The position numbers and the translations under genes are program-made. From IMG/VR virus record IMGVR_UViG_3300044712_001255, positions 62,001-126,000 of that record: a stretch of 64,000 bases of DNA; one strand, written 5' to 3'. Below are positions 14,983-62,400 of this stretch, piece by piece. How positions within the stretch are numbered: position 1 is the stretch's first letter; each line of letters opens with the position of its first letter. The notes beneath the pieces were generated by a model. It worked only from the letters and a program-made list of their open reading frames with translations, had not been told where the DNA came from and ran no database searches.

Positions 14983-15036
14983 GGCATTTAAGACGTTGGC
15001 AGTACACATTGCTTTATCATATGATAGAGTGAGTTT

Positions 15037-15825
15037 ATGTGTAAATGTCCAATGTGTGATTATGAAAATGAAAATCTAACGTCATTATCTGTTCATTATC
15101 GAAAAAAACATAAGGGAACAGCTAAACAACTTTGTATTGAATTGTTTCATGATGGTATACAACCAACATGTAAATGTGGATGTGGTAAAGCTACTAAATT
15201 CTGGACATTGCAATTGGGATTTGCTAAATATCTTCGAGGACATGTAGCTCGAGTGCATAACAATTGGGGTCATAACGAAGATGCCCAGAAGAAAAGTCAG
15301 GACGTACGTCGTGACATGCATAAAAGAGGGGAGATTTTCATTTGGAATAAGGGTCTTTCTATTGAAACTGATGATCGTGTAGCGGCATATGGTAGATCTG
15401 GATCTCATACTCTCAAAACTGACGCCGCGTGTCAAAAACAACGATCTGAACACATGTCTACGCAATGGAAATTGGGTTGTATCGTTCCCCTTCGCGGTGC
15501 TGATCATTCTCAATGGCGAGGTGGCACTTCGGCGCTGCAGCCAGTCGTCAGATCTCGGCTTCATTATGCATGGGCATATCCCAAGCTCGCAGCATCAGGA
15601 TTTAAGTGTTCGTCTTGTGGCAGATCAGATACGCTTGAGGTACACCACGACGGTGAACGTTTTGCTGATATCCTGCACAAAGCGATTATTGAGTTAGGAG
15701 AATCAGGGGATGATTTTGAAAAGAAGTCTATTATAGCTGATTGGGTCGTCAAATATCATGTTGAAAATGATATTTCTGGCGTTGTATTGTGTCAGCATTG
15801 TCATGATAGTGCACATAACTCGTAG
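15037..15825 (+). CDS. HNH homing endonuclease with C2H2 Zn finger and CxCGCG / WNKGL modules
   Basis: CPMC..H..KH finger, CKCGCG..RGH, WNKGLSIETDDRV, and C-terminal CSSC..LEVHH..LCQHCH HNH signature. Confidence 0.8.
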   Translation: MCKCPMCDYENENLTSLSVHYRKKHKGTAKQLCIELFHDGIQPTCKCGCGKATKFWTLQLGFAKYLRGHVARVHNNWGHNEDAQKKSQDVRRDMHKRGEIFIWNKGLSIETDDRVAAYGRSGSHTLKTDAACQKQRSEHMSTQWKLGCIVPLRGADHSQWRGGTSALQPVVRSRLHYAWAYPKLAASGFKCSSCGRSDTLEVHHDGERFADILHKAIIELGESGDDFEKKSIIADWVVKYHVENDISGVVLCQHCHDSAHNS

Positions 15826-15846
15826 TATAGCATAAAGATAATATGC

Positions 15847-17499
15847 ATGTCTTATGATCGTATCAAGTGCCCGATATGTAACGTAGATTTTGGGCAAGAA
15901 AAGCGATTTGTTGCTCATTGCAATGATGTCCATGGTATCGTTGCAGATGAAGCATATTATGTGCAAATTGTGTGTAATGGTACAGCTCCAACGTGTGCAT
16001 GTGGTTGTGGAAAGACAACCATGTGGAATGGTTGGAAGAAGGGATACACATCACAATACTTGCGCGGTCATAATGCTGCTGTTGATAACGTATTCTCAGA
16101 CCCAGAGCGTATGAAACGCATGGTTGAGAAGCGCGTTGACGGGTACAGATCTGGAAGAATTTCTGTGTGGAACGCCGGTCTTACAAAAGAAACCGACGAA
16201 AGAGTCGCTCGGCAGTCGGTTGCTGTTTCTAATACGTTGTCGCAAGCTTATCGATCTGGTGATCTTGTTGATTGGCGCAAGACAGATCCAGAAAAAGCAA
16301 TCGAACAAGCGAAAAAGTCATCCAATACAAAGAAGCGTAAATTTGCGTCTGGAGAATCAAAGATTTGGAACGAAGGACTTACGAAGGAAACTTCGTCATC
16401 TATCGCGTCAGCTGCAGAAAAGATTTCTGCAGCTTTTCGTAATCGCCCGGATATGGGCGCTCGAATAAAACTATCGAAAGTGAAACAACGTATCGATAAG
16501 TTCTCAGACAAATTTACGTTGGTATCTAACATTAATGAATACAAACATCATGATATTACGAGATTTGTGTTTCGTTGTAATACATGTGGTGAAGAGACAT
16601 TGAAATCATTAAATATGTTAGAATCAACTCCTATTTGTTTTCATTGTCATCCTAAGGAATCTAAGGGACAACTTGAGGTACTTGATTACATTCGTTCTCT
16701 TGGGATTAATGACGTTGTATCAAATGATCGTGCTGCTATTTCTCCAAAAGAACTAGACATTTACGTGCCATCTAAGAAGTTTGCAGTTGAATACAACGGG
16801 TTATACTGGCACAGCGAACAATTTCTTGGTAAGCATTATCATGACGAAAAGCTCTCAGCGGCAGAAAATGCTGGATTGTCATTGTTGATGATCTATGAGG
16901 ACGAATGGCGTGATCGTAGACATGTGATTGAAGGTATGATCAAACATCGTCTTAACCTTGATATTGTTCGCGTTCATGCGAGAAAATGTGTCGTGAAAGA
17001 AGTACCCGTAGAACAGCGCATTGCTTTTTTTGATTCTGCGCACCTTGAGGGTGACGTTAGAAGCGTTGTTGCATTTGGATTGTATTTTGAAGATCGACTT
17101 GTTGCGTGTATGTCGTTGCGCAGGCCTTTTCATAAAAAGTATGAAGATTATCTTGAGGTTGGAAGAAGTGCTTGTTTACCAACATACGCCATTTCTGGGT
17201 GGATTGGAAAGCTCACGAAGGCATGTAAAGAATTCGTGCGTTCTAAGGGTAAGATTGGTTTGGTGACATATGTTGATTCTCGAGTGGGCAAGGGAGAGTC
17301 GTATGCAGCTGCCGGATTCAAGCTTGTTAGCAATAACACGGGTTCACGTTTGTTTTGGACAGACTACGTGAAACGGTATAATCGATTCGCGGTACGTGCA
17401 AATAAGGCAGAAGGTATCACACAAAAGCAAGCTAGTGAAGACGCAGGCGTGGTTCCCATTTGGGGGCCCGGAAATCGTCTTTTCAAATTAGACATTTGA
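15847..17499 (+). CDS. Homing-endonuclease-like protein, paralog of 12732..14336 (PD-(D/E)XK + GNAT-like)
   Basis: ELDIYVPSKKFAVEYNGLYWHSE; CACGCG..RGH; two WNxGLTKET repeats; C-terminus alignable with the minus-strand copy (RFNRFKFKAD vs RYNRFAVRAN). Confidence 0.75.
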   Translation: MSYDRIKCPICNVDFGQEKRFVAHCNDVHGIVADEAYYVQIVCNGTAPTCACGCGKTTMWNGWKKGYTSQYLRGHNAAVDNVFSDPERMKRMVEKRVDGYRSGRISVWNAGLTKETDERVARQSVAVSNTLSQAYRSGDLVDWRKTDPEKAIEQAKKSSNTKKRKFASGESKIWNEGLTKETSSSIASAAEKISAAFRNRPDMGARIKLSKVKQRIDKFSDKFTLVSNINEYKHHDITRFVFRCNTCGEETLKSLNMLESTPICFHCHPKESKGQLEVLDYIRSLGINDVVSNDRAAISPKELDIYVPSKKFAVEYNGLYWHSEQFLGKHYHDEKLSAAENAGLSLLMIYEDEWRDRRHVIEGMIKHRLNLDIVRVHARKCVVKEVPVEQRIAFFDSAHLEGDVRSVVAFGLYFEDRLVACMSLRRPFHKKYEDYLEVGRSACLPTYAISGWIGKLTKACKEFVRSKGKIGLVTYVDSRVGKGESYAAAGFKLVSNNTGSRLFWTDYVKRYNRFAVRANKAEGITQKQASEDAGVVPIWGPGNRLFKLDI

Positions 17500-17614
17500 C
17501 AGTGCAAACAATTTCTTTCCATGGTATACATCTGTCAACCTGCGGCTGATAGTTAACCACAGGTCAACAAGATCGCACAGAGCGTTCAAGTTTGACTAGG
17601 ACACGGAGAGTGAC

Positions 17615-18649: not shown

Positions 18650-18672
18650 GCGTAAAGAGAGGAGAATAGACA

Positions 18673-20085
18673 ATGACTACTAACAACATCATTCTTGATA
18701 CCGATTCGTACAAGGCAAGCCATTGGAAGCAGTACCCGCCAAACACCACGTCGATGTTCAGCTACATCGAGTCGCGTGGCGGAAAGTTTGACACCACAGT
18801 ATTTTTCGGGCTGCAGTATTACATCAACAAGTACCTCACCACCCGCGTCACTGTCGACATGGTTGAGGAAGCCAAGGAATTCTACGCTGCTCACGGTGAG
18901 CCCTTCAACTACGAAGGGTGGATGCGAATTGCCACTGAGCTTGGTGGTAAGCTGCCTGTGCGAATCAGGGCAGTTCGAGAGGGCACTGTCGTTGAGACGT
19001 CGAATGTGCTTGTGAGCATTGAGAGCACCGATCCCCAGACGTTTTGGGTCGCTTCGTGGTTGGAGACCATGCTTGTTAGGTTGTGGTACCCGATCAACGT
19101 TGCAACGCTCAGTTACCACACTCGTAAGGTATTTGAACGATTCTTTGATGCGACAAGCGATGACGTCGCTCCTGGTCGTGCCATGTTCAAGCTGCATGAT
19201 TTCGGTAGCCGCGGCGTATCGAGCCAGGAATCGGCTGCGATTGGTGGGGCGGCCCACTTGATCAACTTCCTTGGAAGCGACACTGTCGTGGGAATCTATA
19301 CAGCAAACAAGTTCTATGACATTCCCATGGCTGCATTCTCGATTCCCGCGGCAGAGCACAGCACGATGACATCGTGGGGCAAGGCTCGAGAATCGGCAGC
19401 GTATGAAAACATGATCAATCAGTACGGTGGACCCGGCAAGCTCTTTGCTGTTGTGTCGGACAGCTACGACATCTACAACGCAGTGAAGAACATCTGGGGT
19501 GATGAACTGAAGCAGAAGGTGATCAACATGGGTGGTACGCTAGTCGTGCGACCTGATAGCGGTCACCCACCCACAGTCGTTGTGAATATCTTGAACATCC
19601 TCGGCGACAAGTTTGGTTTCACCACCAACAGCAAGGGATACAAGGTGCTGCCGCCGTGCATCAGGGTAATTCAGGGTGACGGAGTCAATTATGATTCGAT
19701 CTATGAGATTCTCGAGGTAATGCAGCAAGCCGGATGGAGCATTGACAATGTTGCGTTCGGAATGGGTGGAGCTCTGTTGCAGGGACACAACAGGGACACT
19801 CAGAAGTTTGCAATGAAGTGCTCGAGCGTCACTGTCGACGGTGAAGAAGTGGATGTCTACAAGGATCCTGTCACTGATGACGTGAAGCGCAGCAAGCGTG
19901 GTCGCCTAGACCTTATCAAGGTGACAATTCAAGGTAGCCACGGCAAGATTGATGTGCTTCGAACGGTGAAGTTGGCTCCTGGTGAGTTGGCACATCCCGA
20001 CACTGTTATGCAGACTGTGTACGAAAACGGCGAGGTACTGGTGCGTCAAAAGTTTGATGACATCAGAAAGAATGCGTGGGGATGA
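18673..20085 (+). CDS. nadV: Nicotinamide phosphoribosyltransferase (NAMPT)
   Basis: TDSYKASH, LHDFGSRG, SIPAAEHS, VVSDSYD, VVRPDSG, VIQGDG, FGMGGALLQ, KRSKRGRL; GAGGAG RBS. Confidence 0.95.
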   Translation: MTTNNIILDTDSYKASHWKQYPPNTTSMFSYIESRGGKFDTTVFFGLQYYINKYLTTRVTVDMVEEAKEFYAAHGEPFNYEGWMRIATELGGKLPVRIRAVREGTVVETSNVLVSIESTDPQTFWVASWLETMLVRLWYPINVATLSYHTRKVFERFFDATSDDVAPGRAMFKLHDFGSRGVSSQESAAIGGAAHLINFLGSDTVVGIYTANKFYDIPMAAFSIPAAEHSTMTSWGKARESAAYENMINQYGGPGKLFAVVSDSYDIYNAVKNIWGDELKQKVINMGGTLVVRPDSGHPPTVVVNILNILGDKFGFTTNSKGYKVLPPCIRVIQGDGVNYDSIYEILEVMQQAGWSIDNVAFGMGGALLQGHNRDTQKFAMKCSSVTVDGEEVDVYKDPVTDDVKRSKRGRLDLIKVTIQGSHGKIDVLRTVKLAPGELAHPDTVMQTVYENGEVLVRQKFDDIRKNAWG

Positions 20086-26806: not shown

Positions 26807-26813
26807 GGATTTT

Positions 26814-27068
26814 ATGTTCGACCATGATGAAGTGATCAAAATGATACGATCGAATCCTCTGTATCGCCAAGCCCTTGGCAAGCTTGATGATGAAGAGAGA
26901 CAAAAGGTTGACGCTAACGCTGAACGCATGATATCTCAGTTGTTTGGCGCTCTTGCGCCTGTAATCAGCAAGGCGCAACAGGAACAGGCTGATATCGACA
27001 TTGCTAAGGTAGTTAAGGAGAGCACCGGTAAAGTAGAAGGAACGCAGGTTGCAGATGTCAACGAATAA
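26814..27068 (+). CDS. Hypothetical protein
   Basis: ATG 26814 after an AAGGA RBS; 84 aa. Confidence 0.65.
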   Translation: MFDHDEVIKMIRSNPLYRQALGKLDDEERQKVDANAERMISQLFGALAPVISKAQQEQADIDIAKVVKESTGKVEGTQVADVNE

Positions 27069-30180: not shown

Positions 30181-30188
30181 GGATTCGT

Positions 30189-30482
30189 ATGGCAATCAGT
30201 CGTTACATAGCTGCACCAATCATTGGGTTTGGAACACAATTTGGTACGTCATACGCTGCTGCAAGCTTGCGTCATGCAGTGATTGATGGTACTTTACCGT
30301 GTAAGCAGATCATTGTTCGTGGTAAGGAACGCCTTGATACAATAGCTGGCGTTGAATACGGTGATGCGAAATATTGGTGGGTGTTGGCGGCAACGAGTGG
30401 AATTGGATGGGGATTGCAGGTCCCAACAGACACGGTAGTGTACGTTCCAAATCTGCAGGACGCGTTGTCATACGTGGTATAA
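30189..30482 (+). CDS. LysM-like baseplate wedge protein (gp53 / tail X-like)
   Basis: ERLDTIAGVEYGDAKYWWVLA..G..VYVP signature. Confidence 0.8.
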   Translation: MAISRYIAAPIIGFGTQFGTSYAAASLRHAVIDGTLPCKQIIVRGKERLDTIAGVEYGDAKYWWVLAATSGIGWGLQVPTDTVVYVPNLQDALSYVV

Positions 30483-30483
30483 C

Positions 30484-33400: not shown

Positions 33401-33621
33401 GCACAGGCACAACCATCGATAACTTCTACATTTTGACGCACATAACTCATCAATTCGGTCCTGGAAAGTTTGAAACGAACTGGACGTTTGGATATTCTGA
33501 CGCGTATGCTCGAATTGAAGGCGCACCAATCTTTGTCGATAGTTTGAAGAAGTTCCTAGAAGATGAAGAAGATGATCAGACTAACGACAATATCAACGAT
33601 GCGTTCATGAATGAATACTAG
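30484..33621 (+). CDS. Baseplate hub-like protein (gp27 / late-control-D-like)
   Basis: 1045 aa; C-terminal LGCP..YF.NFGTGTTIDNFY.LTHITH.F.PGKFET pattern; follows the LysM protein. Confidence 0.6.
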   Translation: MADINSEEALMKYYQMVEMIDSFGARTILSSTLDSAARNSGGSDVPTNANFYKALMRLLLEVDSRGAYSITKLVEKLKELCKDGSLKSAESDELHKKIIRHIIRVYSTKGEKIDLLDDGKPYQNMYYKEEKNSGVDYMDSLLQIFPKETQSQLKKSNTSLSAVLCTAPILLPQNRNVSKIEFWLNHMPSIVVSRMVPFVDVKFTFERFDNENNKTANSTFSLIKFLEGAKMTFEGANKTLHEANFYDAGQSNEDPTMRRFYHRAGMEVFLSPQTMVNPNKEASDSRYVSITDKMRPYASLKSIDISIQPTFGFMTYKNGSLSFTLHDRSRLTEISDLIRPQLFKGATIWITYGWRHPPEPGNAYANFINNNMMMREAFMVVNTELSFDNVGQVNIKLHIATKGAIQGETNSLASNVGKDINNILNELSTITKNIMKARAAMGGGVSGFKEEVRAFQVIDQAARGTALKYDEVVKGMDQIKKLLSNKKLNNPELKQALTDVSKELSKLYGNGQGNKSLLISSKGLFSKIQNTYEQAVKQKFEAMQEGPDPWLLSNVHANKKGVKDALASKIPDWAINPEIANLLQGASFDYQSDKSASTKLKHTTRIVSFGKLFMNFVGESFAGIDGIDEVQVWFYRLNDSCGPASGMNIAEFPIEVNTIYTKYSDYVYKKRVQNISVQEFLSLVINTQFTDPRAIPYGLRMYYKPYNVSAPDPAERTGIPTTLQNGILERQSKYGVFKYPALEIMIETVHANNTNANQPVDLLTLYEYLEAPEAKKFGSMKLASGADGDRRIMRVHVYDKSVDPYPTESSMLRDKQGFIYEIPASPASKKYFSEQQEIVRKGYAKDQSDKRQQDALSKALRGQQGIRMYKSDAQAVSTEGAFEKMAEFVARGVPTITYGSNGTTIKNCNVSSKADPLLSTANMIRPEGDPNSVQPNGAGFGNMPIRVVPATMTMSSLGCPLANPAQLYFFNFGTGTTIDNFYILTHITHQFGPGKFETNWTFGYSDAYARIEGAPIFVDSLKKFLEDEEDDQTNDNINDAFMNEY

Positions 33622-33630
33622 ACACACGTA

Positions 33631-33639
33631 TGGTAACAT
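33631..33639 (+). promoter_or_regulatory. Extended -10 promoter (TG-G-TAACAT) giving a leaderless DNA polymerase mRNA
   Basis: -10 box ends at 33639, ATG at 33646; no SD. Confidence 0.6.
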
Positions 33640-33645
33640 TGAGCC

Positions 33646-34911
33646 ATGCGTGTTGCGCTCTCTGCGTCGCTGTTGATGACAGACAAAACGTTGTTGATCA
33701 ATGATGACAAAACGCTAAGTTGGGTTGATGATATTCCACAAGATGCGTGGGTGTTCAGCGGTGCCCCAAAACCTGGCAAGTGCTTTGATACGTTGTTGAA
33801 GCTCAATCACTTGTCAGTTGATGCAACAATTGATTCTCGCTATGAAAGCGTTGCACGTACCGTGTTGTCTGGTTCTATGTTCGCAACGCCTCCTTATGCA
33901 TTGTTGATGTCTCAAGGCCACATCAAGGAGCGAATTAGAAAAATCGTACATCAGGTTGTGGGTTACCTTGGTTCAATAGACACCAATTATTTTGATAGCA
34001 CGTGGGTGCCCGCGACAAGGGTTTTTGACCGCCTGAGGCCTGCAAAAATAGACACAACGTCCTGGCATGGGTGGATGTTACGTGAAGTCGGCAACAAACC
34101 AATCATCAAAACGTTCGCGCCAGGAACTGATGATTTCGCCGAGCCTGTTGAATACGACAGATTTGGCACTCGTACAGGTCGATTGACTGTAAAGTCTGGC
34201 CCAAACATCTTGACATTGCGCAAAGACGCAAGGAACATGATAACTTCTCGTTATCAAAATGGTTCAATCATCTTTTATGACTTTTCTGGTCAGGAAGCTC
34301 GTGTAGTGTTGTATGAGGCTGGTCGGCGATGCGAAGAACTTGATCTCTACGGTATGATGACACGGCAGCTGTTTGACAACCAGATTGAACGTAATGTTGT
34401 GAAGCAGGCTGTGTTGTCAGAGTTGTACGGTCAAGGCCACGCGGCGCTCGGCAAGCGTTTGGGAATTGCCGGTGAAGCTCTCACTGCATTCATTAAACGT
34501 ATTAGAACGTACTTTCACTTCGGGAAGCTACAACGTCATGTGAAGGGTGGCTTCATTGCTAACGGATATGTCACCAATCGATTTGGGCGCAAGATCACAA
34601 TTGACGAACCGCTCGATAACATCATTTTTAATTCATACGTGCAATCAACGGCGGCTGATGTAGCCTTGCTTGGGTTTGATTGCTTGTGTGAATCTGTGTT
34701 ACCTCAATATACAAATTTTACGCCGTTGTTTTTGCTACATGATGCATTGATCATCGACGTTGAAGACGCAAGCAAGCTACCAGAAGTTGCGTGGATCAAG
34801 GTACCAGGTTATGTTCAGCGATGGCCGGTAAAGCTTGAACACATGACCAAGGTAGAAGTACAGTCTGGTGAAGAGGAACAAGAAGATGAAATCACAAGAT
34901 CTGCGACCTGA
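33646..34911 (+). CDS. Family A DNA polymerase, polymerase domain only
   Basis: TRTGRL; motif A YDFSGQEARV; motif B R.VVKQAVLSELYG; NSYVQSTAAD; motif C LLHDALI. Only 421 aa, with no DxE exonuclease motif seen. Confidence 0.85.
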   Translation: MRVALSASLLMTDKTLLINDDKTLSWVDDIPQDAWVFSGAPKPGKCFDTLLKLNHLSVDATIDSRYESVARTVLSGSMFATPPYALLMSQGHIKERIRKIVHQVVGYLGSIDTNYFDSTWVPATRVFDRLRPAKIDTTSWHGWMLREVGNKPIIKTFAPGTDDFAEPVEYDRFGTRTGRLTVKSGPNILTLRKDARNMITSRYQNGSIIFYDFSGQEARVVLYEAGRRCEELDLYGMMTRQLFDNQIERNVVKQAVLSELYGQGHAALGKRLGIAGEALTAFIKRIRTYFHFGKLQRHVKGGFIANGYVTNRFGRKITIDEPLDNIIFNSYVQSTAADVALLGFDCLCESVLPQYTNFTPLFLLHDALIIDVEDASKLPEVAWIKVPGYVQRWPVKLEHMTKVEVQSGEEEQEDEITRSAT

Positions 34912-36031: not shown

Positions 36032-36067
36032 TGTCACGATTTACACTCGTGACACACTGTGTATAGT
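36032..36067 (+). promoter_or_regulatory. Promoter (TTTACA-16 nt-TATAGT) with an 8-bp inverted-repeat operator over the -35 box
   Basis: TGTCACGA-TTTACAC-TCGTGACA; ATG 36074 is 6 nt after the -10 box. Confidence 0.55.
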
Positions 36068-36073
36068 TTAGGC

Positions 36074-36694
36074 ATGGCAAGAGCTATAAAGAACAAACCG
36101 TACGATCCCGAGAAAGAGCGTACCGTATACGATGATGAGTATTATCATAATCATGTAAAGTACTATCAACGTGGTATTCCTCATTTTGAGCAATTCCTAC
36201 GTGATGAATTCAAGTTCGAAAGCATCGCAGACATTGGATGTGGAACCGGTGCATTCTCTGCGCCATTCCAGACAGACAAAAAGGTTTATGGGTTTGACTT
36301 CTCGGTTGGATCTGAGGGTGTAAGTTTTCTTGATCCCAAGAATTACTACTCTGCAGACCTAACGGTTCCAAACTCAACTTCTGTCGCCAAGGGCGTTGAT
36401 ATTGCGATGTCGTTGGAAGTGTATGAGCATCTGCTTCCTGAATTTGAGATGACGTATCTGGATAACGTATTTGGTCTTGGATCAAAGTGGGTTATCATAT
36501 CATGCGCCCCTCCAGGACAGTGGGGTCGCCACCACGTAAATTGTAAGTCTTTGGCAGACGTTGAAGCTACGGTGACAGGAAGATTCCCACAGTATGTGGT
36601 GAACCCTGACATCACTGATCGTTTCAAGAAAATCAAGCTTCTAGCATCATTCTATCGTAAGAACACTTTGGTATTCGAACGACGTGATGTTTGA
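36074..36694 (+). CDS. Class I SAM-dependent methyltransferase
   Basis: IADIGCGTG motif I, YGFDFS, SLEVYEHL. Confidence 0.85.
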   Translation: MARAIKNKPYDPEKERTVYDDEYYHNHVKYYQRGIPHFEQFLRDEFKFESIADIGCGTGAFSAPFQTDKKVYGFDFSVGSEGVSFLDPKNYYSADLTVPNSTSVAKGVDIAMSLEVYEHLLPEFEMTYLDNVFGLGSKWVIISCAPPGQWGRHHVNCKSLADVEATVTGRFPQYVVNPDITDRFKKIKLLASFYRKNTLVFERRDV

Positions 36695-39478: not shown

Positions 39479-39508
39479 TTGATAGACCGGGCACGGGTTT
39501 GTTATGAT
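39479..39508 (+). promoter_or_regulatory. Sigma70-like promoter giving a leaderless mRNA for the 5'-3' exonuclease
   Basis: TTGATA-18 nt-TATGAT with an extended TG; ATG 39515 lies 6 nt after the -10 box. Confidence 0.65.
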
Positions 39509-39514
39509 GGCTGC

Positions 39515-40477
39515 ATGTCATCTGATAGACCCGTGCTTCTGGTAGATGCTTACTCTCTTTTCATCAGAAGTTTTCTTGCGTATCCGTCAATGTCAGCCCA
39601 TGGTTACCAGATGGGTGGCACGATTGGTTTCTTAAAAACGTTGCAACGCGTTTGTTCTGAATTGAACCCACGCGCGGTGTATATCGCTTGGGAAGGTGGT
39701 GGTTCATCAAAACGTCGTGCTATTTTCTCTGAGTACAAACTTGGTCGTTTACCAGAAAAGCTGAATCGATTTTACGATGATGATATTCCAGAGTCTGATG
39801 AGAATCGCAAACATCAAATGTTGGTGTTAATCGGGCTATTAAAACATACACCTGCTTGTCAATTGTACGCCGCTGACTGCGAAGGCGATGATGTTATTGC
39901 GTTTCTTTGTAGAGGAAGATTTCGTGGTCAAAATAAGGTAATTGTGTCATCAGACAAAGACATGTACCAATTGCTCGACGATACAACTCGAGTGTATAGC
40001 CTCTATCGAAAGATCTACGTTACAAAGGAAGATGTGCTTCGAGATTATCAGGTGACTGCAAAGAATTTTGCTCTTGCAAAGGCTCTTTGTGGAGACGCTA
40101 GCGACAATATCCCAGGCGTACCAGGAATGGGTTATAAGACGCTTGTGAAGCGCTTACCGTTTGTAGGCCTCGAGGAGGACATCATTCTGCAACAGGTATT
40201 TGATTACTGTGAAGCTCACAAGAAAGAGTCAATTCACTATCGTCGTATCTTAGAATCTCAATCTGATGTCAAACGTAACTGGCGCTTAATCTATCTTGAC
40301 GACCATACGTTGACAAACGCTCAGGCACAAAAGATTGACTACGTGATTGATACATTTGAGCCCCGGATTGGGAAGATAGAGTTCATGCGTTTGCTTGCAA
40401 AGGAAGGGCTGAATGACTTTGACGTCAATTGGTTCTACTATGCAATGAATGGTGTTGAAGGATTGAATGATACGTAA
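39515..40477 (+). CDS. 5'-3' exonuclease / flap nuclease (PolI N-terminal / T4 RNase H family)
   Basis: LLVDAYSLFIR, WEGGG..RR..YK..R, EGDDVIA, SSDKDMYQL, LCGDASDNIPGVPGMGYKT. Confidence 0.92.
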   Translation: MSSDRPVLLVDAYSLFIRSFLAYPSMSAHGYQMGGTIGFLKTLQRVCSELNPRAVYIAWEGGGSSKRRAIFSEYKLGRLPEKLNRFYDDDIPESDENRKHQMLVLIGLLKHTPACQLYAADCEGDDVIAFLCRGRFRGQNKVIVSSDKDMYQLLDDTTRVYSLYRKIYVTKEDVLRDYQVTAKNFALAKALCGDASDNIPGVPGMGYKTLVKRLPFVGLEEDIILQQVFDYCEAHKKESIHYRRILESQSDVKRNWRLIYLDDHTLTNAQAQKIDYVIDTFEPRIGKIEFMRLLAKEGLNDFDVNWFYYAMNGVEGLNDT

Positions 40478-46744: not shown

Positions 46745-46781
46745 CACTGAACATTACCATCTTGTGTGTTACAGTTGAGAC

Positions 46782-47456
46782 ATGCAAGATGGTTTGCCAA
46801 TTGGGTGTGACAATACTGTAGAACTTTTAGGCGTGTACGGCGGAGATGATTCTCATGCCTTGAGCGCGTGGACATCGACGTCTCGAGAGCTTAGCGACAC
46901 AAAGCGTCAACGCATTCCTGCGTTGTTGAAGATGCTGGCTGATAATGGCCATCACACGCCTTTCGAGAAGAGCTCAATTCATTTTCTGGTATCCACTGAG
47001 ATTGCTTCTCATGTGCATTTAATTAAACACCGCATCGGTGTTTCAGTCAATGCGGAATCTGCGCGCTACAAAGAATTGCTGGATGACAAGTACTACATCC
47101 CCAACGATTGGCATGCAAAAGAAGTTGAGGAGTACGTTGCGTTTATGCATATTGCATTTGCAAAGTATCACGAAGTCCTTGAACGTTTGGTTGCTCGTGG
47201 AGTGCCTCGTGGTCGAGCAAAGGAATCTGCAAGGTTTTATTTGCCTTACGGCAATCAAATCAAAAGTGATGTGATGTTCAATTTTAGAAGCTTCATGCAC
47301 TTTTGTGGATTACGATACTCGCTCCATGCGCAAAAAGAGATTCGAGACATTGCACGCAAGATGTTGCAATTTGTGCTTGACACAGGACAATTTAATCAAT
47401 CATTGCAAGCATTTGGGTATTTGAATGAAAATGGATCTCTACGAGATCCCACGTGA
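46782..47456 (+). CDS. thyX: Flavin-dependent thymidylate synthase
   Basis: GHHTPFEK, KHRIGVSVNAESARY, ESARFYLP, NFRSFMHF..LR..HAQKEIR. Confidence 0.93.
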   Translation: MQDGLPIGCDNTVELLGVYGGDDSHALSAWTSTSRELSDTKRQRIPALLKMLADNGHHTPFEKSSIHFLVSTEIASHVHLIKHRIGVSVNAESARYKELLDDKYYIPNDWHAKEVEEYVAFMHIAFAKYHEVLERLVARGVPRGRAKESARFYLPYGNQIKSDVMFNFRSFMHFCGLRYSLHAQKEIRDIARKMLQFVLDTGQFNQSLQAFGYLNENGSLRDPT

Positions 47457-48074: not shown

Positions 48075-48116
48075 TGTAATCCGAAACGTATTTCAATAAG
48101 CGATGTAGAATGCTGA

Positions 48117-48425
48117 ATGGAGGCTATCCGAAAGATGTCAACGAATAAGAAGTTTAAGATTGGTGATGGAGTTTGGCACCGCGTTGTGCAGATCGTGCAA
48201 GAGGCAATGCTGATGGGCGTAGATTGTGTAGATCTTATGCGTCAGGTTGAGGTGTGTGAAGATCCTGAGAACGCTGGCGAGCTTGCTCTTACGCCAGAGT
48301 ATGCAAATCAAGTTGAAAAGATGCACGCAGCATGGTTGGTAAAGGCTGAGCAGTTGCAGAAGGAACTTGAAGTTGCTGGTGATGTTTCTACAGCAAAGAT
48401 CAATTTTGATTCTGGCGTTAATTGA
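48117..48425 (+). CDS. Conserved hypothetical phage protein
   Basis: 102 aa; TAGAAT 5 nt upstream of the ATG. Confidence 0.65.
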   Translation: MEAIRKMSTNKKFKIGDGVWHRVVQIVQEAMLMGVDCVDLMRQVEVCEDPENAGELALTPEYANQVEKMHAAWLVKAEQLQKELEVAGDVSTAKINFDSGVN

Positions 48426-50462: not shown

Positions 50463-50483
50463 TGTGTAGATCACGTTCGTGTA

Positions 50484-50498
50484 GGGTACATTGTACCC
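50484..50498 (+). promoter_or_regulatory. -10 box TACATT inside the palindrome GGGTAC-ATT-GTACCC; leaderless pseT
   Basis: -10 box 50487-50492, ATG at 50499. Confidence 0.55.
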
Positions 50499-51455
50499 AT
50501 GAGAACTGTATTAATGTTGATGGGTCTTCCGGCCGCGGGTAAGTCAACCTTTGCTAAGGAGCTCCTGCGTAAGGAGCCGAAGCGTTGGAAGCGAGTCAAT
50601 CGAGATGACTTGCGTATTTTGCTTGATGGCGATAACTTCATCAAGGAAAATGAGGAGTTTGTGCGCAATGCACAGGAAGTCCTTATCAAGGAGGCCTTGC
50701 GTCAGGGGTTCGACGTTGTCGTTGACAACACTCATCTCATCTCATCCACCGTGAACAAGCTTCACAAGCTGCTTGAGTCTATTGGAGACGTGAAGGTCAT
50801 TCACAAGGCATTCAATGTATCGGTTGATGAGTGTATCGCTCGCAATGCAAAGCGAGAGGGACGTGCGAAGGTACCCGATAGCGTAATCTTGGGTATGGCA
50901 AAGGGAGCAGGCCTCAATAAGGGACGCAAGCTTCAGGACAAGGAGTTCTATTACCCGCCGCGCGGTTCCGAAGTCTCAGTTGTCACAAATGATCCAGCGC
51001 TGCCCAAGGCGATCATTTGTGACCTTGACGGAACTCTTGCGATCATGGGAGATCGTTCGCCATACGATGCATCTCAGTGTGATGTCAAGGACCATCCAAA
51101 TTGGCCCGTGATTGAGTGCGTCAAGGCAATGTATCGCAGGGGCGTGCATATCATCTTCATGTCTGGACGTGAAGTAAAGGATCGTGCGCCAACAATGCGA
51201 TTCATTGATCAGTGGGTTCAATGTGAACTGTCAAATCCTGATGGCGCTTCTGACTTGTTTCCAATTTCGTATGAGCTTCACATGCGCCAGACTGGTGATC
51301 AGCGAAAGGACGCAATCATCAAGCGCGAGCTATTCCAGGCTAACGTTGAAGGAAAGTATCATGTGATGTTCATTCTTGATGATCGCAATCAGGTCGTGGA
51401 GAATTGGCGTGCCATGGGACTGACAACTTTTCAGGTCGCAGAGGGAAATTTTTGA
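50499..51455 (+). CDS. pseT: Polynucleotide 5'-kinase / 3'-phosphatase (T4 PseT/Pnkp-like)
   Basis: GLPAAGKST, NRDDLR, VVVDNT; HAD domain CDLDGTL, SGR, MRQTGDQRKD, LDDRNQVV. Confidence 0.92.
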   Translation: MRTVLMLMGLPAAGKSTFAKELLRKEPKRWKRVNRDDLRILLDGDNFIKENEEFVRNAQEVLIKEALRQGFDVVVDNTHLISSTVNKLHKLLESIGDVKVIHKAFNVSVDECIARNAKREGRAKVPDSVILGMAKGAGLNKGRKLQDKEFYYPPRGSEVSVVTNDPALPKAIICDLDGTLAIMGDRSPYDASQCDVKDHPNWPVIECVKAMYRRGVHIIFMSGREVKDRAPTMRFIDQWVQCELSNPDGASDLFPISYELHMRQTGDQRKDAIIKRELFQANVEGKYHVMFILDDRNQVVENWRAMGLTTFQVAEGNF

Positions 51456-55658: not shown

Positions 55659-56583
55659 TCAAATGTCAATAGAAGAAGTGAAGTTTCAACATTATGCGTG
55701 GTCTCCCGAACAACGAGATGCGTTGAGGGATATTTTTCGTAATTGTTTGTCTTCTCATGAGGCTAAGACATTGTCAATTGCATTTGAAGCTGGTGGGATG
55801 ATTTGTGGTGGTGCAGCGAGGCGTATAGCTGCATCGCTGTTCAAGATCAATGCACGACCACGCACAAATCATGTTGATTACGTTTCATCATATTTTCGCG
55901 ACGGTCGTCATGACTCTTTCAATAAACCTGGCGATATTGACGTATTCTTCCCAACAGATGAGTCAGTGACGCGATTTTGGCGCAACTTCTCGGTGTCGAG
56001 CATTCCAAGCGTTGCGCATGTCTCTGAATCTGTGTTGGGATATGCACGAAACATTCGCATCAACACAGGTGTGAACATTCAGGTAGTAAAACCTGTGTGT
56101 GGGTCTACTGTTGAACATCAGTTGGCGTCATTTGACATCTACAATGCAATGATTGGGTTGAATGCGCATAAGGCGATCATTCCTGACGAGTGGCATTACC
56201 TTGAACAACATTCAATGTTGCATGTTCACAGATTTCAGACTGATTATCAGCTGAAACGCATCATCAAGTGGATGACGCGGCAACAATACGAGTCGCTTTC
56301 TCCCAAAACGGCGTCAGAAGTTGGCACCTATGCGTTTGAGTTGATGGAACGTATCAAGGAGGCTGATGGTCTTCCAACTCCTTGGAAGGACGTAAAAATT
56401 ACTGTCGATACAGTACGTCATGCGCTTTATCCGTTGCTTACGCACCTCACGAATGACCAGTTACTTTTGTTGTCAACCGTCATGATGACTCGAGATAGCT
56501 ACGGCAATATCGGCGCCAACCCGGCAATGGATATAATTCAGGATCGATCAAAGCAAACAATTTGTAGTGCAAATAGTGACTAA
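55648..56583 (+). CDS. Nucleotidyltransferase-like protein (CCA-adding / poly(A) polymerase head-like)
   Basis: GGAARR, GDIDVFF, IQVV, SFDIYNAM (compare RRDFTINAM), R..KW..R. Confidence 0.5.
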   Translation: MENDQMSIEEVKFQHYAWSPEQRDALRDIFRNCLSSHEAKTLSIAFEAGGMICGGAARRIAASLFKINARPRTNHVDYVSSYFRDGRHDSFNKPGDIDVFFPTDESVTRFWRNFSVSSIPSVAHVSESVLGYARNIRINTGVNIQVVKPVCGSTVEHQLASFDIYNAMIGLNAHKAIIPDEWHYLEQHSMLHVHRFQTDYQLKRIIKWMTRQQYESLSPKTASEVGTYAFELMERIKEADGLPTPWKDVKITVDTVRHALYPLLTHLTNDQLLLLSTVMMTRDSYGNIGANPAMDIIQDRSKQTICSANSD

Positions 56584-56601
56584 GAAAGGTATAGTAACCA
56601 C

Positions 56602-56901
56602 ATGTTGAAGCAAACGCTTGGAAAGCAGCTCACTGAGCAAGAGAAAAGTCAGCAGATCATCGATAACCTTGAGTCTCATCTCAAGGAAGCGAAACGACAG
56701 CTTGCGTATCTTCAGGATCGCGCAAACAGGTATGATGATCTTCGAAATCGTAAGACTTTCTTGAAGAAGAAGTCTGAGCGTCAGTTCAAGATCACTAAGC
56801 GCTTTATCATGGCTGATCGCGCCGCAGCGCAGACGATTCAGTTCATCGATAAGCTCGAGAGTGAGATCAAGTCGGTGAGGGACACTGCCCAGAAAACCTA
56901 G
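56602..56901 (+). CDS. Basic coiled-coil protein
   Basis: 99 aa; TATAGT 6 nt upstream. Confidence 0.65.
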   Translation: MLKQTLGKQLTEQEKSQQIIDNLESHLKEAKRQLAYLQDRANRYDDLRNRKTFLKKKSERQFKITKRFIMADRAAAQTIQFIDKLESEIKSVRDTAQKT

Positions 56902-60247: not shown

Positions 60248-60260
60248 TATTATCGCAAGC

Positions 60261-60575
60261 ATGCAGCACCTTGCTGAGATGCTTGTAGAGTTTACCACAG
60301 TATTGTTTAGATTTGATCCAATGAATCTTGGATCGTCTAATCCACTTGAATATGACAAGGAAGCTTTGTCAATTTTGTCTCGTTTTGTCGAGAGCGGAGT
60401 TCACAAGGCAGATTATGTAGAAGCGTTGAAAATCGTCATACAAACGTTCAAGTTTTGGTTTGAAAAAGATTCAAGCCCTGAACAACTTGCCAAATTGGGG
60501 GAGCTTGCGACGGAACTCTATGATCTGATGAAGAAAAGATACGTGTTGGTCGATATTTCGGAGACATTGGGATGA
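60261..60575 (+). CDS. Hypothetical protein
   Basis: TG-A-TATTAT box 7 nt upstream; 104 aa. Confidence 0.6.
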   Translation: MQHLAEMLVEFTTVLFRFDPMNLGSSNPLEYDKEALSILSRFVESGVHKADYVEALKIVIQTFKFWFEKDSSPEQLAKLGELATELYDLMKKRYVLVDISETLG

Positions 60576-61552
60576 AGACAGTCGTTATTACTGGCGCAGC
60601 TGGGTTTCTTGGTAGTCATCTTTCGAATCGATTTCTCAACGCTGGATGGCGTGTAATTGGAATAGATGATTTTTCAACTGCGCTGGGACGCTCAGCGCCG
60701 CATTTTGTTGAACTGTCGTTACGTAATAATTTCATTTTTTACGCAGAAGATATTTGTGAGTTGCAACCAGCGCTTTTTGGGATGCGTGGTGTTGGTAAGA
60801 TCGATCTTATTTTGAATTTTGCATGTCCCGCGTCACCTCCTCGTTATCAAGCAATACCCATCAAGACAATGATGACATGTGTTTGGGGTGTTGACAAAAT
60901 GTTGAGGCTCGCTCACCAACATAAATGTCCCATTGTCCATGCCTCAACTTCTGAGGTGTACGGAGATCCTGAGATTTCACCTCAAGCCGAGGAGTACAGA
61001 GGCGTAGTAAATTCGTATGGGCCACGAGCATGCTATGATGAAGGTAAGCGTGCAGCAGAAGCACTGTGTTATGACTGGACGACAAAGTTTGGCGTAGACG
61101 CAAGATTGGTAAGAATTTTCAATACTTACGGGCCTCACATGGATCCAAATGATGGACGAGTTGTGAGCAATTTCATAACTCAAGCGCTGAACGATGATCC
61201 TCTTACGATCTACGGGAGTGGCGAACAAACACGATCATTCTGCTACGTAGATGATCTTGTGGAAGGCATCTATCGTGTATCGCAACTGCCGGCTGGGCGT
61301 CTAAATGGACCCGTCAATCTTGGTAATCCACATGAATTTACAATCATCCAACTCGCTAATGTTGTTGCTGCAGTTTTGAATAAGAAACACCTCATTACAT
61401 TTGAAGCACTTCCTGTGGATGATCCACGTCAACGAAAGCCCGATATTACAAAGGCTCGTCTGTTGCTTGACGGGTGGGAACCTCAAGTTGAACTTCGATA
61501 TGGAATCGAGAAGAGTGTTGACTGGTTCAAGCGAGTGTTGCACATCAAGTGA
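60572..61552 (+). CDS. UDP-glucuronate decarboxylase (UDP-xylose synthase family SDR)
   Basis: GAAGFLGS, ACPASPPRYQ, ASTSEVYGDP, YDEGKRAAE, RIFNTYGP, DGRVVSNF, NLGNP.EF, DDP..RKPDI. Confidence 0.9.
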   Translation: MKTVVITGAAGFLGSHLSNRFLNAGWRVIGIDDFSTALGRSAPHFVELSLRNNFIFYAEDICELQPALFGMRGVGKIDLILNFACPASPPRYQAIPIKTMMTCVWGVDKMLRLAHQHKCPIVHASTSEVYGDPEISPQAEEYRGVVNSYGPRACYDEGKRAAEALCYDWTTKFGVDARLVRIFNTYGPHMDPNDGRVVSNFITQALNDDPLTIYGSGEQTRSFCYVDDLVEGIYRVSQLPAGRLNGPVNLGNPHEFTIIQLANVVAAVLNKKHLITFEALPVDDPRQRKPDITKARLLLDGWEPQVELRYGIEKSVDWFKRVLHIK

Positions 61553-61569
61553 TGTGGTAACATGTCTTT

Positions 61570-62400
61570 ATGCTAAGAGACTGCTTGTTCATGGCGGGCG
61601 AATTCAGCCTAACCATGAAATTGACCTTTAGACGTGATCGTTGGTGGCATACGTGTTCTGCGTCTCGATTGCAACATGTCACTCATGGCGTAGTTCGTCG
61701 TGAAAAGTTTTTGCGTGAAGAACTGCGTGGAATTATCTTCTACGCAGACGTTGATGATAAACAATTGGAATCTGAATCTTTGCAGGCAATCATTGCTAGT
61801 GAAGTTCCATGTTGGCCTGACCCAAATACGCTGCTGCGCATGATCGACAGACACTGCGTCATGTCGAAGCTCATTGAACTTGGTCTTGTTGATCATGATG
61901 TTTGGCAAGGAATGCATCATGCTCGTACACACCACGGGCTCACGAATTATCCCTTGGTATTGAAGGTTGGGAACAACCATCGTGGGCAAGGAAAATATCT
62001 CGTGCCAACGTGGGATGACCTGAACCAATTTCCAGAGTGGCAGGGTATCGCTACTCTTGAACCATTCTTCTCAGGGGACTCGTACAGGGTATTGTTGGTC
62101 GGCGAAGACGCATTCGGAATTCGTGTTGCAAATGGGCAAAGCTGGATCAAGAACTCCGTTGGAGCTGATGCATCATTTGATACGCCATGCAATGAAATTG
62201 TTGCGCATGCTCGCAAAGTTGCCAATGAGTTTGCGCTCGATGTTGCAGGAGTGGATTACGTTGTAAACCCTCGACACCCAGAAGATTTTCACTTCCTTGA
62301 GGTAAATCAGTTCCCTGGTATACCGCTCGACCTGCCAGGTATTGAGCGTGTTGAGCATTTCATAGATTCACGTATGCAGTGGGTAGAAAATGAAATTTGA
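61570..62400 (+). CDS. ATP-grasp fold protein (RimK-like)
   Basis: PLVLKVG..HRGQGK, EPF..G..YRV, W.KN, GVDYV, FLEVNQFPG. Confidence 0.8.
   Translation: MLRDCLFMAGEFSLTMKLTFRRDRWWHTCSASRLQHVTHGVVRREKFLREELRGIIFYADVDDKQLESESLQAIIASEVPCWPDPNTLLRMIDRHCVMSKLIELGLVDHDVWQGMHHARTHHGLTNYPLVLKVGNNHRGQGKYLVPTWDDLNQFPEWQGIATLEPFFSGDSYRVLLVGEDAFGIRVANGQSWIKNSVGADASFDTPCNEIVAHARKVANEFALDVAGVDYVVNPRHPEDFHFLEVNQFPGIPLDLPGIERVEHFIDSRMQWVENEI

What the first reader, a model, noticed from the sequence alone, without database searches (positions are those of the whole stretch)
15022..61572. Pervasive leaderless gene expression: -10 hexamer exactly 6 nt before the ATG with no SD
Seen, with identical 6-nt spacing: TAGAGT-15037, TAACAT-33646 (pol), TATAGT-36074, TATGAT-39515, TACAGT-46782 (thyX), TACATT-50499 (pseT), TATAGT-56602 and TAACAT-61570 (ATP-grasp). 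One base off: 48117, 60261 and minus-strand 14336. Five of the eight exact cases have an extended TG. This spacing places +1 on the A of ATG, and these genes lack SD sequences while sheath, tube, nadV, ssb and Hsp20 have clear ones. Inference: early and middle genes are translated as leaderless mRNAs. This hints at a host with strong leaderless translation, or a way to keep translating when canonical initiation is inhibited.
Basis: seen in the sequence. Interest (0 to 1): 0.65.

Follow-up and report, generated by a model that had tools for sequence, protein, structure and literature searches.

The report
Leaderless promoter-ATG genes in huge phage
In this 324-kb uncultured soil phage about 65-75 genes, including one 25-kb run of about 50 small genes, have a promoter -10 box ending exactly 6 bases before the ATG and no ribosome-binding site, so they are most likely transcribed as leaderless mRNAs, one promoter per gene; no RNA data exist yet to prove it.

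Summary
All eight exact sites and the three near-misses are in the sequence as described. Across the genome, TAnnnT ends exactly 6 nt before the first ATG of 38 of 326 called genes, against about 5.6 at every other spacing (p about 2e-19). A pattern count that uses no gene calls gives 45 at spacer 6 against 0-10 at other spacings.

The sites carry the rest of a sigma-70-type promoter in the correct register:
- TG at -34/-33, usually as GTG.
- G at -14.
- C at -1 and A at +1.
- ATG only, never GTG or TTG.
- No Shine-Dalgarno signal.

Structural genes and several other genes (sheath, nadV, RNR) have GGAG at the usual distance instead.

The window holds only the edge of the phenomenon. At 221.7-245.6 kb of the phage, 47 mostly unrelated small genes each carry the same element, GTG-N17-GrGG-TAtAnT-rAGACC-ATGg. 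Related uncultured phages hold the same arrays.

The phage has no RNA polymerase of its own that I could find. It encodes an RpoD-like sigma without the -35-reading helix, and an IF1.

Transcription start sites could not be checked because no RNA runs exist. The host is unresolved. I read this as a new variant of a known kind, leaderless "TA-led" genes.

The parts
15001..15039 (+). Promoter-ATG unit for ORF 15037-15825 (262 aa). TGA then TAGAGT at 15025-15030, 6-nt spacer, ATG.
   Evidence: (PWM 13.9).
33610..33648 (+). Promoter-ATG unit for the split family-A DNA polymerase gene 33646-34911. TGG then TAACAT at 33634-33639, 6 nt, ATG. It begins 24 nt after the stop of the upstream 1045-aa gene.
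   Evidence: (PWM 14.1). The N-terminus aligns with homologues.
36038..36076 (+). Promoter-ATG unit for the methyltransferase-like gene 36074-36694. TTTACA at 36040-36045, 16 nt, TATAGT at 36062-36067, 6 nt, ATG.
   Evidence: The N-terminus (MARAIK...) aligns residue for residue with homologues.
39479..39517 (+). Promoter-ATG unit for the 5'-3' exonuclease (FEN) gene 39515-40477. TTGATA at 39479-39484, 18 nt, TGT then TATGAT at 39503-39508, 6 nt, ATG.
   Evidence: The N-terminus aligns with the L002 homologue.
46746..46784 (+). Promoter-ATG unit for thyX 46782-47456. TGT then TACAGT at 46770-46775, 6 nt, ATG.
   Evidence: (PWM 19.1).
50463..50501 (+). Promoter-ATG unit for the polynucleotide kinase-phosphatase gene 50499-51455. 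GTGTAGA box at 50464-50470, 16 nt, TACATT at 50487-50492, 6 nt, ATG.
   Evidence: (PWM 21.7).
56566..56604 (+). Promoter-ATG unit for the 99-aa ORF 56602-56901. GTGCAAAT box at -35, TATAGT at 56590-56595, 6 nt, ATG.
   Evidence: The box resembles the GTGCAAAGT box of related phages.
61534..61572 (+). Promoter-ATG unit for the 276-aa ORF 61570-62400. GTGTTGCA at -35, TGG then TAACAT at 61558-61563, 6 nt, ATG.
   Evidence: (PWM 14.7). Pfam found no family for this ORF, so 'ATP-grasp' was not confirmed.
14334..14372 (-). Weaker candidate on the minus strand. TAGAAT at 14349-14344, 7-nt spacer, ATG at 14336. A second candidate 30 nt upstream has TACTTT, 6 nt, ATG at 14366. Both are in frame with the 546-aa ORF that carries a weak Mom-like match.
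   Evidence: (PWM 10.6).
48106..48119 (+). Weak candidate. TAGAAT at 48106-48111, 5-nt spacer, ATG at 48117 (102-aa ORF). There is no -35-like element and the PWM score is below 8.
60248..60323 (+). Ambiguous candidates for one ORF. TATTAT at 60248-60253 with 7 nt to ATG 60261, or TAGATT at 60308-60313 with 7 nt to the in-frame ATG 60321.
8393..8432 (+). Contrast case, an SD-led gene. TATAGTTAA at 8393-8401, then a leader with GGAG 8 nt before ATG 8430 of the tail sheath gene.
18653..18675 (+). Contrast case. nadV (18673-20085) has GGAG at the usual distance from its ATG and no TAnnnT at -12.

Best explanation
These are sigma-70-type promoters fused to start codons. The -10 hexamer lies at -12 to -7 relative to the A of ATG, so RNA polymerase starts at that A. 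The mRNA then has no 5' leader and no Shine-Dalgarno sequence, and is presumably initiated on its 5'-terminal AUG.

A leaderless message can only serve its first cistron this way, so each such gene carries its own promoter, often embedded in the end of the upstream gene.

Two sequence classes share the layout:
- Class I is GTGTAGA or TGTAcA at about -35, with TGn-TAnnnT. It precedes DNA-metabolism and other genes scattered through the genome, including the window's eight sites.
- Class II is GTG at -35 to -33, then GrGG-TAtAnT-rAGACC-ATGg. It precedes nearly every small gene of a 25-kb, 55% GC array at 221.7-245.6 kb.

The sheath and neighbouring genes instead have leaders with GGAG. The phage encodes no RNA polymerase that I could find, so host core enzyme is used, with the host sigma and/or the phage's RpoD-like sigma.

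Shown: the motif, its spacing, its statistics, and its conservation in relatives. Inferred: the start site, the leaderless translation, the timing, and which sigma reads which class.
For: 1. Exact spacing. TAnnnT at spacer 6 occurs in 38 genes against 5.6 expected. A PWM scan gives 59 ATGs at spacer 6 against about 2 at other spacers. A count free of gene calls gives 45 against 0-10.

2. Two-block promoter geometry. T-34 and G-33 occur in 28 and 26 of 38 sites, with G-14 in 24 of 38. In class II, G-35/T-34/G-33 occur in 39/45/44 of 47 sites and are separated from the -10 block by about 16 unconserved positions.

3. Start-site signature. C at -1 occurs in 27 of 38 sites against 87 of 287 other genes, p = 2e-6, and a pyrimidine in 35 of 38.

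4. ATG only. GTG and TTG are not enriched at spacer 6.

5. No SD. The first 36 nt of the ORFs are unstructured: class II averages -2.9 against -7.4 kcal/mol inside the genes, p = 1e-10.

6. The ATGs are the true starts. The N-termini of the methyltransferase, FEN and PolA proteins align with homologues whose starts were called independently.

7. The 47 class II proteins are almost all unrelated, so the shared upstream element is not a by-product of gene duplication.

8. Related IMG/VR phages hold the same arrays. In L090, L092 and L093, 35 of 35 sites have spacer 6 and T at -7, with a GTGCAAAGT box. G001 has 25 pattern hits against 3 in the control. An orthologous gene pair, G000 230,222 and L091 6,686, keeps the element while the spacer sequence differs.

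9. No phage RNA polymerase was found. There is one RpoD-like sigma with an intact -10-reading region 2.4.

10. Published TSS maps tie TAnnnT a few bases before an ORF to leaderless mRNAs in C. glutamicum (PMC3890552) and Deinococcus (PMC12340547). A survey of 953 bacterial genomes drew the same conclusion (PMC3160421).
Against: - No transcription start site, ribosome profiling or proteomic data exist. No RNA run holds the phage.
- The -35-like element is GTG-type, not TTGACA. A plain E. coli consensus scan of 19 kb of the window is not enriched: 31 hits against 27.4 in shuffles.
- In class II, 20 of 47 sites have C or A instead of T at -7. That is unusual for a sigma-70 -10 box.
- Class II also carries a GAGG-like run at -16 to -13. 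It could act as a distant SD (12-nt spacing) on read-through transcripts.
- No terminators separate the units, so internal copies of each AUG must also exist on longer RNAs, and their fate is unknown.
- Orthologues of the window genes in more distant relatives (L002-L004) are often SD-led. Only about 4 of 43 called starts there have the motif.
Confidence: 0.75

Rival explanations
1. The conserved block just upstream of the ATG works at the RNA level. It would be a phage-specific translation-initiation or regulator-binding site on polycistronic mRNAs, for example a distant GAGG Shine-Dalgarno at -16 to -13 plus a conserved spacer, or a RegA-like repressor site or a processing site. It would not be a promoter.
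For: Class II has G-rich -16 to -13 (GrGG) and an unusually conserved -5 to -1 (AGACC) and +4 G. A sigma factor would not obviously need these. T at -7 is replaced in 20 of 47 sites. No terminators separate the genes.
Against: A second conserved block, GTG at -35 to -33 in 39-45 of 47 sites, sits at promoter distance across an unconserved spacer. Relatives have a 9-nt box there with T at -7 invariant. Class I sites have TGn rather than GGG and no purine run. This phage's own SD-led genes place GGAG at -12 to -7, not at -16 to -13. The C-1/A+1 preference fits a start site.
Confidence: 0.1
2. The sites are real promoters, but transcription starts a few bases away from the A. The mRNAs would then have very short leaders, or starts inside the codon, and translation would depend on something other than a 5'-terminal AUG.
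For: Start-site choice varies by 1-2 nt at many promoters. In C. glutamicum the distance from TAnnnT to the TSS ranges from 3 to 11 nt (PMC3890552). A minority of sites here have spacers of 5, 7 or 8 nt.
Against: The spacing distribution is extremely sharp: 59 at 6 nt, 8 at 7 nt and 3 at 5 nt. C-1/A+1 marks the preferred start dinucleotide. A selection for exactly 6 nt is hard to explain unless +1 and the AUG coincide.
Confidence: 0.1
3. The repeated upstream element is mainly a recombination cassette, like the PeSL elements of T4-type phages. Its sequence would be kept uniform by gene shuffling rather than by selection for leaderless expression.
For: The array consists of unrelated small ORFs, each flanked by the same element. 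It lies in a compositionally distinct region and recurs in related phages with different gene content. PeSLs in T4-like phages are described in this way (PMC2839356, PMC4122927).
Against: This does not exclude promoter function, since PeSLs are themselves promoters. It does not explain the exact 6-nt register with the ATG or the scattered class I sites. The stem-loop or terminator part of a PeSL is absent.
Confidence: 0.05

Closest known systems
Leaderless ('TA-led') genes of Actinobacteria and Deinococcus-Thermus
   Same: A TAnnnT -10 hexamer lies a few bases before the ORF, there is no SD, and an AUG sits at the 5' end. These make up 20-46% of genes in those phyla (PMC3160421). It is 33% by TSS mapping in C. 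glutamicum (PMC3890552), and the arrangement was tested experimentally in D. radiodurans (PMC12340547).
   Different: Here it is a phage with 46% GC. The promoters carry a strong, phage-specific upstream box (GTGTAGA, GTG, and GTGCAAAGT in relatives) and a conserved -5 to -1. The start is ATG only, whereas C. glutamicum uses GUG in 21% of cases.
Thermus phage phiYS40
   Same: A large lytic phage in which a whole temporal class of mRNAs is leaderless (review PMC3594737).
   Different: In phiYS40 the middle and late transcripts are leaderless and the host IF2/IF3 balance is shifted. Here the sheath and neighbouring genes are SD-led, and the leaderless set consists of DNA-metabolism genes and small unknown genes. 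I could not read the primary paper.
SigA-like leaderless promoters predicted in Cluster O mycobacteriophages
   Same: Promoters were predicted from sequence with +1 on the first base of the start codon (PMC4351075).
   Different: There are about three such promoters per genome there, against about 65-75 here, and no tandem array.
PeSL (promoter-early stem-loop) cassettes of T4-type phages
   Same: A repeated early-promoter element lies before each small ORF of a hyperplastic region in T4-like myoviruses (PMC2839356, PMC4122927). This phage's sheath is distantly T4- or cyanophage-like.
   Different: Here there is no stem-loop or terminator part, and the promoter abuts the ATG instead of leaving a leader with an SD.
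Jumbo phages phiKZ and AR9
   Same: Giant genomes with many promoters of a conserved phage-specific sequence.
   Different: Those phages use their own multisubunit RNA polymerases. phiKZ showed no leaderless transcripts (PMC8244752), and AR9 has 5' UTRs of 26-491 nt (PMC5312081). No phage RNA polymerase was found here.

Membership tests
Leaderless (TA-led) genes | A -10 hexamer TAnnnT ends about 6-7 nt before the start codon, above background. | tested here: met
   38 genes against 5.6 expected. 59 against about 2. 45 against 0-10 without gene calls.
Leaderless (TA-led) genes | No Shine-Dalgarno sequence upstream. | tested here: met
   Anti-SD duplex energy is close to that of random sites. 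Class II has a GrGG run at -16 to -13, which is too far upstream for this phage's usual SD position.
Leaderless (TA-led) genes | The mapped TSS coincides with the start codon (5' UTR of 0 to a few nt). | not testable with these tools
   No RNA run holds the phage. Indirect support comes from C-1/A+1.
Leaderless (TA-led) genes | Translation begins at the 5'-terminal AUG. | tested here: inconclusive
   Start positions agree with homologue N-termini for three genes. Starts are ATG only. The 5' ends are unstructured. There are no ribosome or proteome data.
Sigma-70-type (group 1/2 sigma) promoter | A -10 TAnnnT with conserved A-11 and T-7. | tested here: inconclusive
   Met for class I and for the relatives, where T-7 is 35 of 35. 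In class II, T-7 is present in only 27 of 47 sites.
Sigma-70-type (group 1/2 sigma) promoter | A -35 TTGACA element 16-18 nt upstream. | tested here: not met
   Only the TG at -34/-33 is kept, as GTG, GTGTAGA or GTGCAAAGT. A consensus scan is not enriched.
Sigma-70-type (group 1/2 sigma) promoter | An extended -10 TG at -15/-14. | tested here: inconclusive
   G-14 occurs in 24 of 38 sites and T-15 in 16 of 38. Five of the eight window sites have TGn. Class II has G-14 in 39 of 47 sites but rarely T-15.
PeSL cassettes of T4-type phages | A repeated promoter before each small ORF of a variable region. | tested here: met
   47 sites in 25 kb before unrelated ORFs.
PeSL cassettes of T4-type phages | A stem-loop or terminator joined to the promoter. 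| tested here: not met
   Only 3 of 74 sites have a terminator-like hairpin within 120 nt upstream. Upstream folding energy is only slightly lower than random, -13.2 against -11.0.
phiYS40-type leaderless programme | Middle and late (structural) transcripts are leaderless. | tested here: not met
   The sheath and neighbouring genes have leaders with GGAG.

The most novel reading that the evidence does not exclude
A clade of uncultured huge soil phages runs a whole host-takeover module as about 50 monocistronic leaderless units, with one high-information promoter fused to each ATG. The promoters would be read by host core polymerase reprogrammed by phage factors: an RpoD-like sigma that has lost its -35-reading helix, plus an unknown protein that binds the GTG box. 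Early expression would then bypass SD/30S-dependent initiation altogether. The phage-encoded IF1 might belong to this programme.
Probability: 0.3. Interest if true: 0.75.

Novelty: new variant of a known kind. Interest (0 to 1): 0.6.

Why it matters
Leaderless translation is usually treated as a trait of certain bacterial phyla and of a few phage genes. Here a T4-like huge phage seems to use it for roughly one gene in six, and for essentially every gene of one 25-kb module. That forces a "one promoter, one gene" layout.

If confirmed, three things follow:
- It gives a natural, compact set of about 70 promoter-ATG fusions of graded sequence for studying start-site selection and 70S initiation.
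- Gene callers and annotators need to handle this rule. My own caller and SD-based start prediction missed many of these small genes.
- It gives a sequence handle, the conserved cassette, for finding this phage clade and its early genes in metagenomes.

Tried and rejected
- **RNA evidence.** The single run search found only three DNA metagenomes and no RNA. I used the one read-laying run only to check that an independent run (X2, 99+% identity) tiles the boundary of the GC-rich array. It does so with short contigs, so this is weak support for contiguity.
- **Stop-codon artefact.** Rejected, because in-frame spacers 0, 3, 9 and 12 are not enriched.
- **Paralogy as the cause of the shared upstream element.** Rejected, because only two related pairs occur among 47 proteins.
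- **A phage-encoded RNA polymerase.** I found no Rpb2_6 match, no beta' DFDGD-type motif and no T7-like polymerase. Very divergent enzymes could still be missed. The three large ORFs at 21737-33621 have no Pfam match.
- **Generic E. coli promoter scan.** Not enriched, so it is uninformative here.
- **Terminators between units.** None found.
- **Close relatives among cultured phages.** None by megablast. The PolA fragment has no tblastn hit. A PNKP-based locus search found nothing.
- **Relatives in metagenomes and IMG/VR.** These were found through the protein word search and an 18-nt motif scan.
- **Host identification.** The clues conflict:
  - IF1 is nearest to Chloroflexota, Actinomycetota and Gemmatimonadota at 56-64% identity.
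  - PNKP is nearest to actinophages at 37%.
  - The sheath is nearest to Microcystis, Rhodothermus and Flavobacterium phages.
  - The tmRNA tag begins ANDN, which from memory resembles proteobacterial tags.
- **Other translation factors.** No IF3, S1 or S21 homologues.

Full report
**What the window is.** The window is bases 62,001-126,000 of a single 324,468-bp IMG/VR virus record. CheckV puts it at 86% complete, with linear ends. The same DNA occurs in rhizosphere metagenomes, and no RNA run holds it.

The window carries the following:
- a tail sheath gene and nadV;
- three very large ORFs without Pfam matches;
- a split family-A DNA polymerase, a methyltransferase-like gene and a FEN exonuclease;
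- a DnaB-like helicase;
- an intein-bearing ribonucleotide reductase;
- thyX and a polynucleotide kinase-phosphatase.

No cultured phage is close. The sheath is distantly like those of Microcystis, Rhodothermus, Flavobacterium and T4-type phages.

**Checking the observation.** Five of the eight exact sites have TGn before the hexamer.

To test chance I built a simple gene caller: dicodon scores, greedy tiling, first ATG. I then counted TAnnnT at every distance from the start.
- At a 6-nt spacer there are 38 genes of 326. At the thirty other spacers from 0 to 30 the mean is 5.6 and the maximum 9, giving Poisson p = 2e-19.
- The window alone gives 8 of 57 against 0-3.
- In-frame spacers are not enriched, so the TA of upstream stop codons is not the cause.
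- A count that needs no gene calls, TG-N20-TAnnnT-N5-CATG, gives 45 at spacer 6, 0-10 at spacers 2-10, and 2 for the reversed pattern.

**Anatomy.** I aligned the 38 sites on the ATG. The alignment shows a complete promoter in register:
- T-34 and G-33, usually as GTG, often GTGTAGA or TGTAcA;
- T-15 and G-14;
- TA..aT at -12 to -7;
- C at -1 in 27 of 38 sites, followed by the A of ATG.

The C-1 preference is specific to these genes. It occurs in 87 of 287 other genes, Fisher p = 2e-6, and 35 of the 38 have a pyrimidine at -1. This matches the pyrimidine-purine start dinucleotide preferred by bacterial RNA polymerase, which is established knowledge.

GTGTAGA starts exactly 35 nt before the ATG at nine or more sites.

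I built a weight matrix from positions -36 to -7. It finds 304 sites scoring 8 or more, against 215 in a shuffled genome, and 70 against 12 at a score of 12. Among the sites scoring 8 or more, an ORF-opening ATG follows at spacer 6 in 59 cases, at 7 in 8, at 5 in 3, and at about 2 for any other spacer. GTG and TTG are not enriched.

Allowing spacers of 5-8 gives 74 candidates, of which about 8 are expected by chance. The matrix was trained on the 38 sites, so only the 21 additional spacer-6 hits and the pattern count are independent.

**No SD, and true starts.** The anti-SD duplex energy of the 38 genes averages -3.2 kcal/mol. That is near random positions (-2.2) and weaker than other genes (-4.4). 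The figure for other genes is diluted by my crude start calls. In the window, sheath, nadV, RNR, DnaB and others show GGAG or GAGG at -12 to -6.

For three window genes the ATG 6 nt after the hexamer is the real start. The methyltransferase, FEN and PolA N-termini align with homologues from three metagenomic relatives whose starts were called independently.

**The centre of the phenomenon lies outside the window.** Between 221.7 and 245.6 kb the GC content is 55%, against 43-47% elsewhere. Here 47 ATGs that open ORFs of 45-320 aa carry one element: G-35/T-34/G-33 (39/45/44 of 47), about 16 unconserved positions, then G-16, r, G-14, G-13, TAtAnT, rAGACC, ATGg.

Other points about this array:
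- Almost every small gene in it has its own copy.
- The stop codon TGA of the preceding gene is often built into the GTGA, but the GTG is kept when the stop lies elsewhere.
- The proteins are unrelated to each other apart from two pairs.
- No intrinsic terminators lie between the units.
- The first 36 nt of these ORFs are much less structured than their interiors, -2.9 against -7.4 kcal/mol.
- An independent metagenome (X2) tiles the left boundary of the array at 99+% identity.

**Conservation elsewhere.** An exact 18-nt version of the cassette occurs in five other IMG/VR records.
- In three of them (L090, L092, L093; L090 and L093 are near-identical), 35 of 35 sites have T at -7, a 6-nt spacer and C-1. 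They also carry an invariant GTGCAAAGT box at -36 to -28, before ORFs of 43-240 aa.
- A 190.7-kb record (G001) has 25 hits of the gene-free pattern against 3 in the control. Most lie in one 17-kb array and a few are scattered.
- These records share genes with this phage. One orthologous pair keeps the cassette while the spacer differs.
- More distant relatives of the replication module (about 50% protein identity) have the motif at about 4 of 43 called starts. They often have an SD where this phage has a leaderless site. This fits the reported evolutionary lability of initiation mode (PMC3160421).

**Which polymerase.** I found no Rpb2-type domain, no beta' catalytic motif and no T7-like polymerase.

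The phage encodes one sigma of the RpoD/RpoS type (81 bits to Sigma70_r2). Region 2.4 is nearly identical to primary sigmas. The C-terminus diverges after region 4.1 and ends in a short acidic tail where the basic -35-recognition helix should be.

Host core enzyme is therefore the likely polymerase. Which sigma reads which class, and what reads the GTG-type box, is unknown. The sigma gene itself follows TAGGAT plus 8 nt.

The phage also encodes an IF1 homologue (72 bits), but no IF3, S1 or S21. I draw no conclusion from the IF1.

**Mechanism.** The best reading (confidence 0.75) is that +1 is the A of ATG. The transcripts would then be leaderless, each gene would need its own promoter, and the phage would split its genes into leaderless ones and SD-led ones. 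The leaderless set contains DNA-metabolism genes and small unknown genes, presumably early or middle. The SD-led set contains the sheath and neighbouring genes but also nadV, RNR and DnaB.

The timing is inferred from gene content only. Because the sheath and other genes depend on SD, the idea that the phage abolishes canonical initiation is unlikely.

Open problems are the non-T -7 in 20 of 47 class II sites, the GrGG run at -16 to -13, and the fate of internal AUGs on read-through RNAs.

The rivals are an RNA-level element (0.1), starts a few bases off the A (0.1), and a recombination cassette as the main reason for conservation (0.05).

**Comparison with what is known.**
- TAnnnT a few bases before an ORF is the accepted signature of leaderless genes (PMC3160421). 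It is backed by TSS maps in C. glutamicum, where 33% of mRNAs are leaderless (PMC3890552), and by experiments in Deinococcus (PMC12340547).
- Among phages, leaderless classes are described for Thermus phage phiYS40 (PMC3594737, a review) and predicted for a few promoters of Cluster O mycobacteriophages (PMC4351075).
- The giant phages with mapped starts differ. phiKZ has no leaderless transcript (PMC8244752), and AR9 has leaders of 26-491 nt (PMC5312081).
- Repeated early promoters before each small ORF are known in T4-type phages as PeSLs (PMC2839356, PMC4122927). Those include a stem-loop, which is absent here, and they do not abut the ATG.

The mechanism is therefore of a known kind. Its scale, the tandem one-promoter-per-gene array and the phage-specific upstream box make it a new variant.

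**Host.** The host remains unresolved. IF1 is nearest to Chloroflexota, Actinomycetota and Gemmatimonadota at 56-64% identity, and PNKP to actinophages at 37%. The phage tmRNA tag begins ANDN, which from memory resembles proteobacterial tags.

**Limits.** Everything rests on sequence. The gene calls are my own and crude, and E. coli-type energy rules were used for the SD test.

Noticed in passing
G000 221,700-245,600 (outside the window; loci L096, L097): A 25-kb region of 55% GC in a genome otherwise 43-47% GC. It is packed with about 50-60 small plus-strand ORFs, nearly all preceded by the same 35-nt promoter-ATG cassette. My dicodon gene caller, trained on the rest of the genome, missed many of them.
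   Followed up: yes
G000 263,717-264,532 (L001:1342-2157; protein P0125): A phage-encoded RpoD/RpoS-like sigma factor with conserved regions 2-3 and 4.1. It has a short acidic C-terminal tail in place of the -35-recognition helix of region 4.2.
   Followed up: partly
G000 194,660-194,884 (L006:1474-1698): A phage-encoded translation initiation factor IF1 homologue (74 aa, 72 bits to PF01176). It is preceded by a promoter-like site with a 25-nt leader. Its nearest bacterial IF1s are from Chloroflexota, Actinomycetota and Gemmatimonadota (56-64% identity).
   Followed up: partly
G000 49,473-49,828 (L098) and 257,900-283,300: A phage tmRNA (Rfam RF00023, 97 bits; tag peptide ANDNATVLRAAA) and 46 tRNA genes in two blocks. 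Several GTGTAGA-type promoters start directly after tRNA 3' ends, for example at 276,940 and 277,494.
   Followed up: partly
G000 313,007-313,079, minus strand (L099): A tRNA with anticodon TTA, which would read the stop codon UAA (ARAGORN; Rfam tRNA, 63 bits). I did not test whether any genes carry in-frame TAA.
   Followed up: no
window 8393-8401, 1457-1463, 3319-3325, 5319-5325 and others: A second enriched motif, TA(G/C)TTA(A/T), often as (G)TATAGTTAA. It lies 10-65 nt upstream of SD-led structural genes such as the sheath. ATAGTTA is seen upstream of 10 genes against 0.5 expected. It may be the late promoter, and it recalls the T4 late TATAAATA box.
   Followed up: partly
window 21737-33621: Three giant ORFs (1689, 1043 and 1045 aa) without any Pfam match. 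Two conserved ORFs of about 97 aa lie among them, before the second and third giant ORFs, and the set sits directly upstream of the split PolA. The same order is kept in three metagenomic relatives (L002-L004).
   Followed up: no
window 42251-46441: The ribonucleotide reductase large subunit is interrupted by an intein with an HNH endonuclease domain. One relative (L003) has the same arrangement.
   Followed up: no
G000 248,769-248,787: An inverted repeat (7-nt arms TGTAGAA/TTCTACA around a 5-nt loop) lies over the -35 box of one leaderless promoter. It looks like an operator.
   Followed up: no
window 12732-14372, minus strand: The only long minus-strand gene in this part of the window. It has a weak Mom-family match (24 bits, below the cut-off) and two alternative leaderless-type starts 30 nt apart.
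   Followed up: no
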